A DNA stretch of 55,513 nucleotides. Origin: Octopus bimaculoides (Eukaryota). The position numbers and the translations under genes were made by a program. Positions 22,804-50,325 of this stretch are shown piece after piece (within the stretch, counting starts at the first letter, position 1; every line of letters begins with the position of its first letter). The stretch covers positions 28,501,947 to 28,557,459 of the forward strand of contig NC_069005.1 in NCBI RefSeq assembly GCF_001194135.2, in the 5' to 3' direction. The notes beneath the pieces were generated by a model. The model was not told the origin of the DNA, did not search any database, and was given only the letters and a program-made list of their open reading frames with translations.

Positions 22804-22861
22804 CAGGGGCCGAGCAATCGGCACAGACCTCCGCTGTGATTCTAATATTTCCTCTGGACAT
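22804..22861 (-). CDS. GIT: First coding exon of ARF GTPase-activating protein GIT (GIT1/GIT2 orthologue); start of the ArfGAP zinc finger
   Basis: Reverse complement reads ATG TCC AGA GGA AAT ATT AGA ATC ACA GCG GAG GTC TGT GCC GAT TGC TCG GCC CCT G|gtaagt = MSRGNIRITAEVCADCSAP plus a phase-1 donor. This matches the recalled human GIT1 start MSRKGPRAEVCADCSAPD. An in-frame TAA lies 12 nt upstream of the ATG, so this ATG is the start. Too short to appear in the ORF track. Confidence 0.93.
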
Positions 22862-24526
22862 GTGAGGGTATTATTAAACTTTATCTCCAGGATTTATTTT
22901 TAAGAAAAATTGATTATAAATACTACTACTATTACTTGCTAATATTAATAGTAATAATAATAATAATAACAACTTATTATTATTATTATTATTACTATAG
23001 TATCAACTTAATCCTCGCAGGGCAAAGCTGAATGAATTGCCAGTGGTACCAGTTTGTGCTTGAAACGGCTGTAAGGGCCGAGGAAGAGGCAGAAAAATTA
23101 AACAACTGCCACCACTAATCACCTACGATGGCTCCAGTTTTGTCAGCCATGCCAAGCTGGAGCAAGCTTCTTGTGGTTGCAACTGTTATTGTTGCTGTTA
23201 TTTTGTTGTTGTTATTAATATTATTATTAATATTCTTATTATTATCGATGTGGCAGCTGGTCGGTTTGTTTGTCCTTCTTTCTTTCTTCACATGGCTGAG
23301 GTTTCTGTTGCTGTAGCGACCAAAGAGCGTCAATGATGATGCCGATGATGATGGTGGTGATGGTGATGACGACGACGACGACAACTATTCTCTGGTATTA
23401 ATTATTGTTGTTGCTTCTGTTCTGATTGACCTACCATCAGATAAATAGCTTCAGAGAAAAAAAACTATTATTTTTGTTTTTATTCCACTTCCTCTTGTCT
23501 CCAATCAATTTTTTTTTTTGACTAAATGATTTTATTTATTTATTTATTCTGTAATTTTTTTTTTGTGAATTCCTCGTCCTGTTCTTTTTAATATCTTTTC
23601 TTCCTTTTCTTCTTCACGTTTACTTTCCTTTTTAGAGGTGGGACAGGCAAGGTGGAGCAAGAGTGATGCTGTTGTTGTTGTCGTTGACAATCTCACTGCT
23701 TAAGATATTGTTGTTGTTATTTATTGTTCTAATAACAGCACAGAAAGCCGGCTGGCTGCTCAGTTTACCAAATTCTATTATTATTATTATTATTATTTTT
23801 TTAAAGCAAGACAGGTCCAGTTTAATCCAAACAAGCAGAACGAGAGAGAGAGAGAGAACGAGAACACAGGTCAGAAAAATCAATAATTGAATTAGTTATG
23901 TGATGACGTTAACAACATCAACAATAACTTCATAGGTTCTGCTCAGGACAAACGGGAAAAAGATAAGAAAGAGTTGGACAACGACAGGAGAATAAGTTAG
24001 GGAACAAAAAGAAACCCTTTCTCAAAAATGGATCAGCTGGGTCCTTTTATCACTCAGAAATACCCAAATATTTGTTAAGATTCGTGACAGGGTCAGGTCT
24101 TAGTCTGGGGGGATATTTAGGGTCTAGAGGGTCGTGATAGAGAGACTTCTTGCATCAAGACTTACAAATTACACAAACAGCAGCATTAATTAACACTGTT
24201 GCAGCTGCTGCTGCTGCTGCCAGTGATGATGGTGGTGGTGGTGGTGGTGGTGAAGGCCTGAGTAGAAAAGGCCTTTTGAGATTATTGTAGATTTTAGGGG
24301 GGGGGTTATCTATTTTTTTTGGGGGGGGTCTTACATTTTTGTTGGTTAGCTGATGGTGGTGGTGGGGGTTAAGTTAATTCTTATTCTTATCTGTCCCTTT
24401 AATCTGGTCCTGATTCAAGTTCTTGCCTGATTGCTCCACCTTTATTCTTTATACGCACACACGTGCTCAAACATTAATCTTCCACAGAAACAGGTATATA
24501 TATATAAAGAGAAAGATTACTCCAAA

Positions 24527-24561
<35 letters not shown>

Positions 24562-24722
24562 TTGATGTTGTTGTTTACAACAGTAAATGGCTGACGCTGA
24601 TGATGACGATGATGATGATGACGACGATGATGGTAGTGGTTGTGGTGTGAGGCGGATGCTGCTCTTGGTTATTGATGCTTGCAGTGGGTCCTCTTATCTG
24701 CTACATACACTAATGGCAACTG

Positions 24723-24754
<32 letters not shown>

Positions 24755-24813
24755 AACACATTAAAACATGATAAACAAGAGAGAGAGAGAGGGGAAAGAT
24801 AGAGAGAGACAGA

Positions 24814-24845
<32 letters not shown>

Positions 24846-25199
24846 ACAGAGTAAACACTGAAACGATCAAATCTTAATGGTAGGCTCTGTAGGAATAGTA
24901 GTAATAACAGTAGTAGTAGTAGTAATGCTAACTAATTGACAAACAACAAAACATGTATTGAATGCGTTCTCTTAAATATAGAGACTGTGTATTGAATGTG
25001 TTTTCATACACAGACACAGACACACACACAATGTCCTGTAACAGAACAATCAACGTTAATGCAGTATAAAAGAGGATTTTATGTGCGGGACACCAGATAT
25101 ATGTGGACGTGTGTGCGTATGTGTGTGTGTGTGTATTCATTTGTGCATGTAAATACAAAAACAAATAGGTGAACGTATGTATGTGTGTGTGTGTGTGTG

Positions 25200-25269
<70 letters not shown>

Positions 25270-25289
25270 GTATATAAGTGTATACATGT

Positions 25290-47354: not shown

Positions 47355-47389
<35 letters not shown>

Positions 47390-47989
47390 TATACACACAC
47401 ACACACACACATATTTATACAAATGACAATTAGCTGTGCGTGTCTATGTGCACATACCATTAGCATTTGTATGTGTGACAACTAAAAGATGACTTTTTTT
47501 ACAAATAATATTGATTATCTTCAAGTTATAAATGTATAAAATATTCCGTTTGGCATTTTTAGTCATTTGTTAAATGTATTCGATCTATTGTTGTGCTGTA
47601 TGTATGTAACTAGGTACAGTATACATTGCAATATATATATATATTACTAGCTTAAAAGCTGTCCTACCAGGCGGGTTTTTAAGCTAGCTCCTATGGAGGG
47701 CTTTTCATTAGGCTTTGGGCCCAACAATGACACTTCATGCATTGAATACATATTAAATTTTATTAACTCTCGCCTTTAGTTGAGCAAATCGACCGCAGGA
47801 CTTATTCTTTGTAAGCCTAATACTTATTCTATCAGTCTCTTTTGCCAAACTGCTAAGTTACGGGGGATATATTGTCTGATCCCAAACCTGTTGGCTTATG
47901 GTCTCTTTAGCGAGTGGCCTGTTCAGAAAATGGAGGAGGAAAAAACTTTGTTAGTCAACAACAGGAGATTATCTCCCTTTGGCTCTCAA

Positions 47990-48330
47990 TTGTGAATGCC
48001 CCTGTTATTATGTGGGTCCTGAAGTGCAAGCATGGTCTGAAGACCTCCGTTCTGGAGTTAAGGATGTTCCCCAAGTTGAGGGAGTCCCTTAGTACCCTTG
48101 CCTTTTCAGCTATGCACAGCTTACAATGCTTGGTCCTGTTTATATAGGGACCTGGATTTTCTTGGATTCTCCATGATATTACATGTGGAATTCCATCGTC
48201 CTTCAGCTGCCATACATGACTCGCTAATGACATAACTCATCTCCTTTCCAGTATCCTGAAGGAGGACCTGTGGTTGTAGAAGTGTTACTTGAATGTGTTA
48301 CCAGAGCATCTGATGTATCTCCGTGCTCAG
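47990..48330 (-). mobile_element. Penelope-like retroelement GIY-YIG endonuclease C-terminal fragment (dead)
   Basis: Minus frame RYIRCSGNTFK*HFYNHRSSFRILERR*VMSLASHVWQLKDDGIPHVISWRIQENPGPYINRTKHCKLCIAEKARVLRDSLNLGNILNSRTEVFRPCLH fits the PLE pattern YIG.T..TFK.R..NH..SF…LS.H.W.LK….I.W.I…C.LC..EK…LN.R.E…C.H. It carries two in-frame stops. Confidence 0.8.
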
Positions 48331-49143
48331 TTGTTGGCAATGCTGTATCTGCTGGTGTTACATCAAAGGAGCCTATGGGGTGGGATTGCTTGACCCAGGT
48401 CGAACTTTTATTGAACAGCAGTTTTCTTGATGTGTATAATGATATCTATGTCTTTGTCACTAACGTCATGACTTATGATGTTTCTATTTTGGATTTATGT
48501 TTTACCAACGATGTATGTATATATGGTGCTCCAGCTTGACCGCAGAGGACTGAAGCAAGTAAAAAAAAAATAATAATAATACACACACAGAGGTGGGGGT
48601 GATGCAAACAGAAAAAATAGAGCTCAAAACAGGAATATATATGTTTTTTTATTAACAGTCAATGGAATAGCAGAACGACTCAGGGACGTGAGTTTCGTCC
48701 AGGAAACTCTCGACCCTTGAGTCATTTTCTATTTTTTGCCGATTATTTATGAAGAAAAGAAGAGGCTATCGAATGCAACATGTTAAAGGGAGAATATAAA
48801 TATATAATCCTTTATTAGCTGAGAAAACTACAGGAGCGACTTAGGGCCAAGAGTTTCCTGCCAAGACACTTGTCAAAGATCACGTGCTTCAACAGGAAAC
48901 TCTTGGTTCTTGAGTTGCTCCTTGAGTGCTACCAGGTTATAAAGAAGTTGATGCACACATGTATGTATATATGTGAGTGTGTGTGTGTGTATATATATAT
49001 ATTTACAGTGTATATAGTGCCGTTACATACGTCAGTGTAACAAGGCAAATGTCTCTGCTGGTCTCATCAAATGTATTTATCCTACCAAAAATAAAGTGAC
49101 GTGTCATTCCTTGGCAGCATATGAATGAATTAAATGGTATATA

Positions 49144-49175
<32 letters not shown>

Positions 49176-49509
49176 GATAGATAGATAGAGAAAGAGAGAA
49201 AGATTTGTTGACTGTGAGCGAACTCACGCAGTGGTATACGCACGCACACACACACACACATATGCATTAACCGAAGCCGTCAACAGGTTTTGTGAATGTC
49301 GTAAAACGGCAAGTCTTTCTCTTTCTCTTTCTCTCTCCCTCTCTCTCTCACATACACTCACACTTGTACTCATGCGTAAGTGCATGTATATAACGGAATA
49401 TGTAGGAACGAAATGTATTCTGTAATAAAAAAGGAAAGCGAAACGAAATTTTATTTTAAGATGTAGAAACGTTTATATACACACCCACCTCAATCCATGT
49501 GTGTGTGTA

Positions 49510-49554
<45 letters not shown>

Positions 49555-50190
49555 GATGTATGAAAACTTACACATTATATAATACATTACCTAGAGATTC
49601 TTAAAATTTTTTTTCCACAATTCCTGTTATATTTGTGCATTTGTTTTGTCTAAAAGCCTCTTCTATCTTCTTTCACTACATATATTTACATCTTTCTTTG
49701 GGAGGGGGTGAGATTGGAAGGAAAAGCAAAAAGAGAGAGGAAGAGAGAGAGGAAAAGATATATATATAGACAGAGAGAGAGGAAGAGAGGCAAGTGTAAC
49801 CACCTCCCGCATGTACACACACATATAAATAAATAGATTATATTATAATTTGTGCTTGATCATCTCTGTTCATTTATCCGTTTGGATTTTATTATATCGT
49901 GGTCCTTACCTTTTTTATCGAAGCCTCTGTGTGTGTTTATGTAAGCGTATGAGTGTGTATCTGTGTCAATGTACGCGTGCTTGTGTGTGTGTGTGTGTGT
50001 GACTATAATTGCGTGCGTGCGTGCGTGCGAGTGTATCTAAGCTAAGCGTATCTGTGTATTTTTTTTTTTACGACAGTCGACAGCCGGTACTAAGCGGGGT
50101 TCCTTCCTCCCGTCTGTGTTGTTTGCACCAGTTTTTGTTTTTGTTTGACGCTGATGGCGTTGGTAGGTCGTCAGATTTGGCACCTCTGAC

Positions 50191-50325
50191 ATGTCTACAA
50201 GCAAGACGACGACAACGATATCGAGAAACTATACCAGCAGTGATATCGAAAAGGATTACCCTTTACACTGGCTCGTCTGGACCAATAACTTTCAGGAGCT
50301 AGAAAAGGAGCTTTGTAAAAGTACG
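50191..50325 (+). CDS. ANKRD13: First coding exon of ankyrin repeat domain protein 13 (ANKRD13A/B/D type)
   Basis: MSTSKTTTTISRNYTSSDIEKDYPLHWLVWTNNFQELEKELCKST followed by ACG|gtgagt (phase-0 donor at 50326). YPLHxLVWxNxxxELEKEL matches the recalled N-termini of ANKRD13A (YPLHLLVWKNDYRQLEKEL) and ANKRD13B (YPLHYLVWHNRHRELEKEV). Exon 2 was not found before the window end. Confidence 0.9.

What the first reader, a model, noticed from the sequence alone, without database searches (positions are those of the whole stretch)
22804..50325. Head-to-head GIT / ANKRD13 pair: a probable ancient bilaterian microsynteny retained in a cephalopod
Seen: the first coding exons of GIT (minus, ATG 22861) and ANKRD13 (plus, ATG 50191) point away from each other, 27,330 bp apart, with no recognisable coding gene between them. 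Recalled knowledge: human GIT2 is divergently adjacent to ANKRD13A (12q24) and GIT1 to ANKRD13B (17q11.2). Coleoid cephalopod genomes are known for losing much ancestral microsynteny. Both proteins act in receptor endocytic trafficking (ArfGAP/PIX scaffold; ubiquitin-binding UIM adaptor). Inference: the orientation predates the protostome-deuterostome split and may be held by shared cis-regulation, even though the spacer here is filled with SINEs and MITEs. I do not know whether published microsynteny lists already include this pair.
Basis: partly seen in the sequence, partly recalled or inferred. Interest (0 to 1): 0.85.

Follow-up and report, generated by a model that had tools for sequence, protein, structure and literature searches.

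The report
Ancient head-to-head GIT–ANKRD13 gene pair
Two unrelated trafficking genes, GIT and ANKRD13, start back-to-back here as they also do in termites and (by gene order) in humans, so this is an old inherited gene neighbourhood of a well-known kind, not a new kind of feature.

Summary
A 58-nt exon at 22804-22861 (minus strand) encodes MSRGNIRITAEVCADCSAP. It ends in a phase-1 GTAAGT donor exactly where termite GIT genes, and by protein evidence vertebrate ones, split exon 1 from exon 2. A 135-nt exon at 50191-50325 (plus strand) encodes the YPLHWLVW-type N-terminus of ANKRD13. The two ATGs are 27,330 bp apart. Between them I found only dispersed short repeats, microsatellites, a Tc1/mariner remnant and eight assembly gaps.

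New evidence: host contigs from termite-gut metagenomes, of eight sequence types, carry GIT and ANKRD13 head-to-head, 927-1065 bp from ATG to ATG. Their GIT exons 2-5 are unambiguous (PDB GIT2, E = 3e-112). Published ordered gene lists put GIT1 next to ANKRD13B, and GIT2 near ANKRD13A, in humans. An ancestral bilaterian pair is therefore well supported.

Five other invertebrate contigs, from unidentified species, lack the pair.

Three points remain untested: that shared cis-regulation holds the pair together, that the window is cephalopod, and that the scaffold is continuous across the gaps. The spacer here is about 29 times the termite one, and CpG enrichment lies beside each first exon (clear at ANKRD13, mild at GIT). 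A compact bidirectional promoter therefore cannot be what links the genes here.

Conserved 5'-5' pairs number in the hundreds, so interest is modest.

The parts
22804..22861 (-). First coding exon of a GIT-type ArfGAP gene. It has 19 codons plus 1 base and encodes the first Cys pair (CADC) of the ArfGAP zinc finger. The donor GT is at 22803-22802, phase 1.
   Evidence: Sequence read. EVCADCSAP is identical to real vertebrate GIT1 N-termini. The pattern with its donor matches once in the window and in 0 of 100 shuffles. Fused to termite exon 2, residues 11-19 align to ArfGap profile positions 14 onward. Termites have the same phase-1 boundary.
50191..50325 (+). First coding exon of an ANKRD13 gene of the A/B/D type. 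It has 45 codons and contains the YPLHWLVW motif at the start of the first ankyrin repeat. The donor GT is at 50326-50327, phase 0.
   Evidence: Sequence read. tblastn with recalled human ANKRD13A gives E = 1.4e-4. It aligns with exon-1 peptides of other invertebrates, with Y23 P24 L25 H26 W27 W30 invariant. In four of those loci the downstream exons hit Pfam ANKRD13_C. The pattern matches once and in 0 of 100 shuffles.
22862..50190 (.). Spacer between the two start codons: 27,329 bp, 38% G+C, 8 assembly gaps (3,166 N), with dispersed short repeats and microsatellites. No recognisable host gene.
49800..50600 (.). CpG-rich stretch around the ANKRD13 first exon (CpG observed/expected 1.14-1.29, against 0.51 for the whole window). 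It probably marks that gene's own promoter region.
   Evidence: That it is a promoter is an inference.
23000..23600 (.). Mild CpG enrichment (observed/expected 0.72-1.0) just upstream of the GIT start codon. It is a candidate GIT promoter region.
   Evidence: That it is a promoter is an inference.
40585..40956 (+). Remnant of a Tc1/mariner-type transposase (N-terminal HTH domains only). It starts directly after the gap at 39855-40582, and the frames are broken downstream.
   Evidence: Pfam HTH_23 at E = 1.8e-6, plus HTH_SB and HTH_Tnp_Tc3_2. Seen again.
26497..27208 (.). Dispersed repeat (a related copy lies at 8684-8954) that carries an array of 8.2 copies of a 66-bp unit.
   Evidence: families D13 and D18.
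36156..36569 (.). Two inverted copies of a 134-nt dispersed family. Other copies lie at 18601, 19025, 38937 and 43561. The family looks SINE-like but was not classified.
   Evidence: I2; D16.
1..22803 (-). Start of GIT intron 1. No exon 2 lies within 22.8 kb, a stretch that contains 9 gaps.
50326..55513 (+). Start of ANKRD13 intron 1. No exon 2 lies within 5.2 kb.

Best explanation
The window carries the first coding exons of a GIT-type ArfGAP gene (minus strand) and an ANKRD13 gene (plus strand), transcribed away from each other. The arrangement is inherited from an early bilaterian ancestor and was not assembled anew.

Shown:
- The identity and boundaries of the two exons.
- The same head-to-head pair in eight termite sequence types, with only 0.93-1.07 kb between the start codons.
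- The two genes listed next to each other in human 17q11.2.

Inferred:
- The ancestral pair shared a compact, probably bidirectional, promoter region. Such a region offers almost no room for a harmless chromosome break, and this kept the genes together.
- In this genome the spacer grew about 29-fold through insertion of short dispersed repeats, a Tc1/mariner element and microsatellites.
- Each gene now has its own promoter region. CpG enrichment lies beside each first exon, clear at ANKRD13 and mild at GIT, but the interior of the spacer was not scanned for CpG.
- The linkage here now most likely persists because no break has yet fallen in 27 kb, and not because a core promoter is shared. A shared long-range regulatory landscape is possible but has no support so far.
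For: - Exon sequences and donors; uniqueness against shuffles.
- Real vertebrate GIT N-termini read MSRKVQRSEVCADCSAPDPGW.... Alternative isoforms diverge exactly before DPGW, which places the exon 1/2 boundary at the same point.
- Termite locus L006: GIT exon 1 at 6279-6226 (minus) encodes MSKGKLRNVQECADCGSS followed by G|GTGAGT. Exon 2 starts ...ttacag|AT CCT ACA TGG and encodes [27 protein letters not shown]. The ANKRD13 ATG is at 7219.
- L024 carries GIT exons 1-5. The spliced product hits Pfam ArfGap at E = 4.7e-29 plus Ank, and PDB 6jmt GIT2 at E = 2.9e-112.
- Twelve termite-type contigs fall into 8 intergenic sequence types that are 82-92% identical. All have the pair, 927-1065 bp from ATG to ATG.
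- An ordered human 17q11.2 list reads '...GIT1, ANKRD13B, CORO6, SSH2' (PMC2917037). A 12q24 block lists GIT2 and ANKRD13A (PMC10137185).
- Spacer content and the CpG profile.
- 5'-5' pairs are the dominant and most stable class of conserved pairs (Irimia et al. 2012).
Against: - Only one exon of each gene is in the window, so splicing to a full gene body is not shown.
- Eight gaps separate the two exons, and the scaffold join is unverified.
- The human orientation is recalled, not tested.
- The taxon of the window is unverified.
- In five non-termite invertebrate contigs the neighbour of ANKRD13 is something else, or nothing was found. L010 has a peptide deformylase gene, L011 an RFC-like AAA gene, and L017 an FHA-RING gene. 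L029 shows no GIT exon in 6.6 kb and L002 none in 10 kb. The pair is therefore often lost.
- Termites count as one lineage. The protostome evidence thus rests on two lineages, one of them being this window.
- No outgroup (cnidarian, sponge) and no other mollusc was examined.
Confidence: 0.8

Rival explanations
1. The pair is actively kept together by selection. The two genes share enhancers or a regulatory domain and are co-expressed, perhaps because both act in receptor endocytosis, so that a break in the 27-kb spacer would be harmful.
For: - Conserved 5'-5' pairs as a class show excess co-expression and fewer insulators (Irimia et al. 2012).
- The orientation survived a roughly 29-fold expansion of the spacer.
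- Both human paralogous pairs stayed adjacent.
Against: - No conserved non-coding element, expression data or chromatin data could be examined.
- The spacer is 11.6% gap and otherwise largely repeats and microsatellites.
- CpG enrichment was found only beside the two first exons, 27 kb apart.
- The pair has been broken in several other invertebrates without apparent loss of either gene.
Confidence: 0.3
2. The adjacency in this window is a scaffolding artefact: the two exons sit on different contigs that were wrongly joined across one of the eight gaps.
For: Eight N runs lie between the exons. Several abut microsatellites, where short-read scaffolding is error-prone.
Against: A random mis-join would have to bring together, in divergent orientation, exactly the two gene families that are neighbours in termites and humans. 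With tens of thousands of genes this is very unlikely (inference).
Confidence: 0.04
3. The adjacency arose by chance or by convergence, independently in this lineage, in termites and in vertebrates.
For: ANKRD13 has different neighbours in several other invertebrate contigs. This shows that the region does rearrange.
Against: The same two families, the same divergent orientation and the same first-exon structure occur in three distant lineages. The chance that a given gene acquires one specific neighbour is of the order of 1 in 10,000 per lineage (inference).
Confidence: 0.02
4. One or both exons are relics left behind after a rearrangement and are no longer joined to a gene body.
For: No second exon of either gene lies within 22.8 kb (GIT side) or 5.2 kb (ANKRD13 side).
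Against: Both reading frames are intact from ATG to a consensus donor at the conserved position, and the conserved residues are kept. That introns of tens of kb are usual in cephalopod genomes is my own knowledge, and it also assumes the unverified taxon.
Confidence: 0.05

Closest known systems
Human GIT1-ANKRD13B (17q11.2) and GIT2-ANKRD13A (12q24.11) neighbour pairs
   Same: The same two gene families lie next to each other. An ordered gene list gives GIT1 then ANKRD13B, and GIT2 and ANKRD13A fall in one block. The GIT N-terminus and the exon 1/2 boundary are shared.
   Different: From my own recollection, the human intergenic distances are very short. Here the start codons are 27.3 kb apart and the spacer is filled with repeats.
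Termite GIT-ANKRD13 pair
   Same: Head-to-head orientation. GIT has a short first exon (18 codons there, 19 here) that ends in a phase-1 donor before DP.W. ANKRD13 has a first exon with YPLHWLVW and a phase-0 donor.
   Different: The termite spacer is 927-1065 bp and alignable across eight sequence types at 82-92% identity, which is compatible with a bidirectional promoter. The window's spacer is about 29 times longer.
Conserved ancestral microsyntenic pairs in 5'-5' orientation, such as HSPD1-HSPE1 (Irimia et al. 2012, PMC3514665)
   Same: Two unrelated genes, divergently transcribed and adjacent in distant animal lineages. This class accounts for 54.8% of conserved pairs in human and has the best-conserved orientation.
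   Different: Whether GIT-ANKRD13 is on that paper's list could not be checked, because no supplement is held. Co-expression and a shared promoter are not shown for this pair.
Metazoan microsyntenies retained in coleoid cephalopods (Schmidbaur et al. 2022, PMC9023564)
   Same: Old gene neighbourhoods that persist in coleoids with enlarged intergenic regions.
   Different: Neither gene name occurs in that paper's held supplements.

Membership tests
GIT family of ArfGAPs (ArfGAP - ankyrin - SHD - coiled coil - FAT) | A short N-terminus (MS[RK]...) that runs straight into the first CxxC of the ArfGAP zinc finger | tested here: met
   In MSRGNIRITAEVCADCSAP, the stretch EVCADCSAP is identical to vertebrate GIT1. 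It aligns to ArfGap profile positions 14 onward when joined to termite exon 2. On its own the 20-aa peptide hits nothing in Pfam or the PDB.
GIT family of ArfGAPs (ArfGAP - ankyrin - SHD - coiled coil - FAT) | A phase-1 intron immediately before the DP(G/T/S)W of the ArfGAP domain | tested here: met
   Window...CCT G|GTAAGT. Termite...TCG G|GTGAGT and acag|AT CCT ACA TGG. Vertebrate alternative N-termini diverge exactly before DPGW.
GIT family of ArfGAPs (ArfGAP - ankyrin - SHD - coiled coil - FAT) | The rest of the ArfGAP domain, the ankyrin repeats, and the SHD, coiled-coil and FAT regions | tested here: inconclusive
   None is present in the window. The exons must lie beyond base 1 or inside gaps.
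ANKRD13 family (ankyrin repeats - ANKRD13_C - UIMs) | An N-terminal exon with the [YF]PLHWLVW motif that opens the first ankyrin repeat and ends at a phase-0 donor a few codons after EL..EL | tested here: met
   63 exon-1 peptides of the same type were found in other invertebrate contigs. Most of those inspected read V or another residue at the same place, where translation continues through the donor.
ANKRD13 family (ankyrin repeats - ANKRD13_C - UIMs) | The ANKRD13_C domain (PF11904) and C-terminal ubiquitin-interacting motifs | tested here: inconclusive
   Not present in the window. In loci L001, L010, L012 and L019, the same type of first exon is followed on the same strand by exons that hit PF11904.
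Conserved ancestral microsyntenic pair, 5'-5' class | The two genes are direct neighbours in this genome, with no gene between them | tested here: met
   The spacer shows no Pfam-recognisable gene apart from a transposase remnant, no tRNA and no Rfam family. Caveats: 11.6% of the spacer is gap, small-exon genes could be missed, and the scaffold is unverified.
Conserved ancestral microsyntenic pair, 5'-5' class | The same neighbours in the same orientation in other distant lineages: an ecdysozoan | tested here: met
   Eight termite sequence types.
Conserved ancestral microsyntenic pair, 5'-5' class | The same neighbours in the same orientation in deuterostomes | tested here: inconclusive
   Adjacency is supported by published gene lists. 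Orientation is only recalled. Three look-ups of vertebrate loci returned nothing.
Conserved ancestral microsyntenic pair, 5'-5' class | A short intergenic distance, or a shared bidirectional promoter | tested here: not met
   The start codons are 27,330 bp apart in the window, and CpG enrichment was found only beside the two first exons. The feature is met in termites, at 927-1065 bp.
Conserved ancestral microsyntenic pair, 5'-5' class | Correlated expression of the two genes | not testable with these tools
   No expression data are available.

The most novel reading that the evidence does not exclude
GIT and ANKRD13 form a functionally coupled, co-regulated endocytic module. Selection on a shared regulatory landscape has kept the two genes together since the bilaterian ancestor. 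On this reading the inflated spacer hides conserved regulatory elements, which would make it a natural experiment separating 'bidirectional promoter' constraint from 'shared landscape' constraint.
Probability: 0.2. Interest if true: 0.5.

Novelty: new member of a known kind. Interest (0 to 1): 0.33.

Why it matters
Anciently conserved head-to-head pairs are used to infer ancestral gene order and to find genes that share regulation. This pair adds one well-anchored example, with an identical first-exon structure in a putative cephalopod, in termites and in vertebrates. It also offers a useful contrast: a spacer of about 1 kb in termites against 27 kb here. That contrast could be used to test whether such pairs are held by a shared promoter, by a shared regulatory domain, or simply by a lack of breaks. 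It does not reveal a new mechanism. The pair may already be listed in supplementary tables that I could not read.

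Tried and rejected
- Homologue search with the 45-aa ANKRD13 exon found no candidates. The 19-aa GIT exon is too short for that tool.
- A chimeric query (window GIT exon 1 plus recalled human GIT1) returned only vertebrate GIT1/GIT2, and no invertebrate. 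It did validate the recalled probe at up to 95% identity.
- The exhaustive representative search with the ANKRD13 exon gave only nine weak hits, six of them exon-1 fragments. An alignment of five of those with the window exon was then used as the last homologue query, and that query opened the termite route.
- Three look-ups of vertebrate GIT loci returned 'not on record'. The human and vertebrate orientation therefore could not be tested on DNA.
- Supplements: none is held for Irimia et al. 2012. Neither gene name occurs in the held supplements of Schmidbaur et al. 2022 or of PMC8851819 (BMC Genomics 2022).
- Searches for 'microsynteny' plus ANKRD13, 'synteny' plus ANKRD13, and 'bidirectional' plus ANKRD13A or ANKRD13B gave nothing relevant.
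- The two exons alone against the PDB and Pfam gave no significant hit.
- I considered and rejected a bidirectional promoter in this window, because of the 27-kb distance and the CpG enrichment confined to the two first-exon regions.
- I did not accept the MITE label. The inverted repeats found are microsatellite-derived or paired copies of one dispersed family.

Full report
**What is in the window**

On the minus strand an ATG at 22861 opens a 58-nt exon. It encodes MSRGNIRITAEVCADCSAP plus one base, followed by G|GTAAGT. On the plus strand an ATG at 50191 opens a 135-nt exon. It encodes MSTSKTTTTISRNYTSSDIEKDYPLHWLVWTNNFQELEKELCKST and ends before GTGAGT at 50326.

The back-translated EVCADCSAP plus donor pattern matches once in the 55.5-kb window. 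So does the back-translated YPLHWLVW pattern. Neither matches in any of 100 dinucleotide-preserving shuffles. No further exon of either gene is detectable in the window. I probed with recalled human sequences and with real termite and other invertebrate exon translations. Both first introns therefore run off the window: more than 22.8 kb for GIT and more than 5.2 kb for ANKRD13.

**Are the exons what they were called?**

*GIT.* The 120 real vertebrate GIT1/GIT2 proteins returned begin MSRKVQRSEVCADCSAPDPGW... or MSKRLRSSEVCADCSGPDPSW.... Their alternative N-terminal isoforms diverge exactly before DPGW. The vertebrate exon 1/2 boundary therefore lies where the window's phase-1 donor lies.

Termite contigs confirm this on DNA. 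Exon 1 reads MSKGKLRNVQECADCGSS followed by G|GTGAGT. Exon 2 starts ...ttacag|AT CCT ACA TGG and reads [27 protein letters not shown]....

Fused to termite exon 2, the window exon aligns to the Pfam ArfGap profile from position 14. On its own the 20-residue peptide is too short to hit Pfam or the PDB.

*ANKRD13.* Recalled human ANKRD13A matches the exon at E = 1.4e-4. An exhaustive search found short gene calls from other animals that share the motif [YF]PLHWLVWNN. A profile built from them retrieved 63 such exon-1 peptides. In four fetched loci the same strand continues with exons that hit Pfam ANKRD13_C. tblastn with ANKRD13A also aligns along whole genes.

Both family assignments are therefore sound, although only the first exon of each gene is seen here.

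**The spacer**

- It is 27,329 bp long with 38% G+C.
- It contains eight N runs totalling 3,166 bp. Two of them (45203-46140 and 47326-47335) are missing from the program's list.
- All gaps lie in non-coding sequence, so reading frame does not matter. Five of the eight abut a microsatellite or short tandem repeat.
- No Rfam family reaches its gathering threshold and there are no tRNA genes.
- A Pfam scan of 88 non-repetitive ORFs of at least 48 aa found only a Tc1/mariner-type HTH remnant at 40585-40956, directly after a gap.
- About 4.75 kb belongs to repeat families that recur within the window. Examples are a 134-nt family with five copies listed (up to eight by self-BLAST), a 168-nt family, and a 271-nt family carrying a 66-bp tandem array. 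There are also many microsatellites.
- I could not show MITEs.
- CpG observed/expected is 0.51 for the whole window. It rises to 1.14-1.29 over 49800-50600 at the ANKRD13 exon, and to 0.72-1.0 over 23000-23600 just upstream of the GIT start. I profiled CpG only around the two exons, not across the interior of the spacer. That each gene has its own promoter-proximal region is an inference.

**The pair elsewhere**

The decisive new evidence came from fetching DNA around the exon-1 peptides.

*Termite-type contigs.* Some contigs are named 'termite gut metagenome' (L003-L005), and closely related ENA and JGI contigs exist (L006-L008, L020, L022-L028). All carry the GIT exon 1 on the opposite strand upstream of the ANKRD13 exon 1, 927-1065 bp from ATG to ATG.

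- L006/L007 also hold GIT exons 2 and 3 (E = 1e-31 and 3e-18).
- L024 holds exons 1-5.
- The spliced product hits ArfGap plus Ank and the solved GIT2 structure 6jmt at E = 2.9e-112.
- The intergenic sequences fall into eight types that are 82-92% identical, so several related host species are represented. They still count as one lineage.
- That these contigs are host termite DNA is an inference from the record names and the intron-containing animal genes.

*Humans.* An ordered 17q11.2 amplicon list reads '...GIT1, ANKRD13B, CORO6, SSH2' (PMC2917037). A 12q24 block lists GIT2 and ANKRD13A (PMC10137185). The divergent orientation in human is recalled knowledge and I could not test it. All three vertebrate look-ups returned nothing.

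*Other invertebrate contigs.* The pair is not universal. In five contigs from unidentified species the neighbour upstream of ANKRD13 is different or undetected:

| Locus | Upstream of ANKRD13 |
|---|---|
| L010 | peptide deformylase gene, divergent |
| L011 | RFC-like AAA gene, divergent |
| L017 | FHA-RING gene, same strand |
| L029 | no GIT exon within 6.6 kb |
| L002 | no GIT exon within 10 kb |

**Interpretation**

The same two families, the same divergent orientation and the same first-exon architecture occur in the window's genome, in termites and, by gene order, in both human paralogous regions. This is best explained by inheritance from an early bilaterian ancestor. Independent assembly, or a chance mis-join producing exactly this pair, is very unlikely (inference). 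That argument also indirectly supports the scaffold across the gaps.

The termite spacing of about 1 kb fits the bidirectional-promoter class described by Irimia et al. 2012. In that study 5'-5' pairs make up 54.8% of conserved pairs and keep their orientation best.

In the window the spacer is about 29 times longer and full of repeats, so a shared core promoter cannot be what holds the genes together here. The evidence does not distinguish passive persistence from a shared long-range landscape. I favour passive persistence, because the pair has been broken repeatedly in other invertebrates.

**Comparison with what is known, and novelty**

This is a member of a known kind: conserved ancestral microsyntenic pairs in 5'-5' orientation. 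No paper in the searchable library names the pair in that context. The relevant supplement of Irimia et al. is not held, so prior cataloguing cannot be excluded.

They report 275 retained metazoan microsyntenies in Euprymna against 216 in a scallop.

I could not verify that the window comes from a cephalopod. None of the tools holds eukaryotic reference genomes.

**Verdict**

An ancient origin is well supported. Cis-regulatory constraint, taxon and scaffold continuity are untested.
- This is a solid but ordinary comparative-genomics finding. Interest is about 0.33.

Noticed in passing
window 45203-46140 and 47326-47335: Two N runs inside the finding's interval (938 and 10 bases) are missing from the gap list that the scan's program attached. 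The spacer has 8 gaps, not 6.
   Followed up: yes
window 40585-40956 (+): A Tc1/mariner-type transposase N-terminus (HTH_23, HTH_SB, HTH_Tnp_Tc3_2) begins immediately after the 728-N gap. No DDE domain follows and the frames are broken downstream, so this is a truncated or decayed element.
   Followed up: partly
window 47955-48233 (-): A 92-aa ORF of normal composition (MSLASHVWQLKDDGIPHVISWRIQENPGPYINRTKHCKLCIAEKARVL...) has no significant Pfam hit. From memory it resembles ORFs found in repeated elements of marine invertebrates. It was not identified.
   Followed up: partly
window 26497-27208, 8684-8954, 11649-12025: A dispersed repeat family. The copy in the spacer carries 8.2 tandem copies of a 66-bp unit, which creates long spurious ORFs in all frames.
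   Followed up: partly
window 20141-20372: A 29-bp tandem repeat in GIT intron 1 produces Pro/Gly-rich pseudo-ORFs of 110-126 aa in three frames. It is not a gene.
   Followed up: no
whole window; 49800-50600: The window is strongly CpG-depleted (observed/expected 0.51), as in a methylated genome, with a CpG-rich island only around the ANKRD13 first exon.
   Followed up: partly
L011 1-4654 (Logan SRR19201356): In this unidentified invertebrate, the region upstream of ANKRD13 holds an RFC-like AAA gene (divergent), an exon encoding a neurophysin domain (Pfam Hormone_5, E = 1.7e-20) and a Ras/Roc-type GTPase gene.
   Followed up: partly
L012-L016 and L018: Contigs from six different sequencing runs all begin 257-260 bp upstream of the ANKRD13 ATG. 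The assemblies break at the same place, which suggests a repeat or hard-to-assemble sequence just upstream in those species. This prevented a test of the neighbour there.
   Followed up: no
literature: human 17q11.2 and 12q24 gene lists: A slingshot phosphatase gene occurs in each list: SSH2 at 17q11.2, two genes beyond ANKRD13B, and SSH1 in the roughly 2-Mb 12q24 block that holds GIT2 and ANKRD13A. The conserved paralogous block may therefore be larger than two genes.
   Followed up: no
output: All 120 best vertebrate GIT hits are 442-648 aa, shorter than full-length GIT (about 760 aa from memory). Ranking by score appears to favour short isoforms. This may be why none could be located on a contig.
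   Followed up: no
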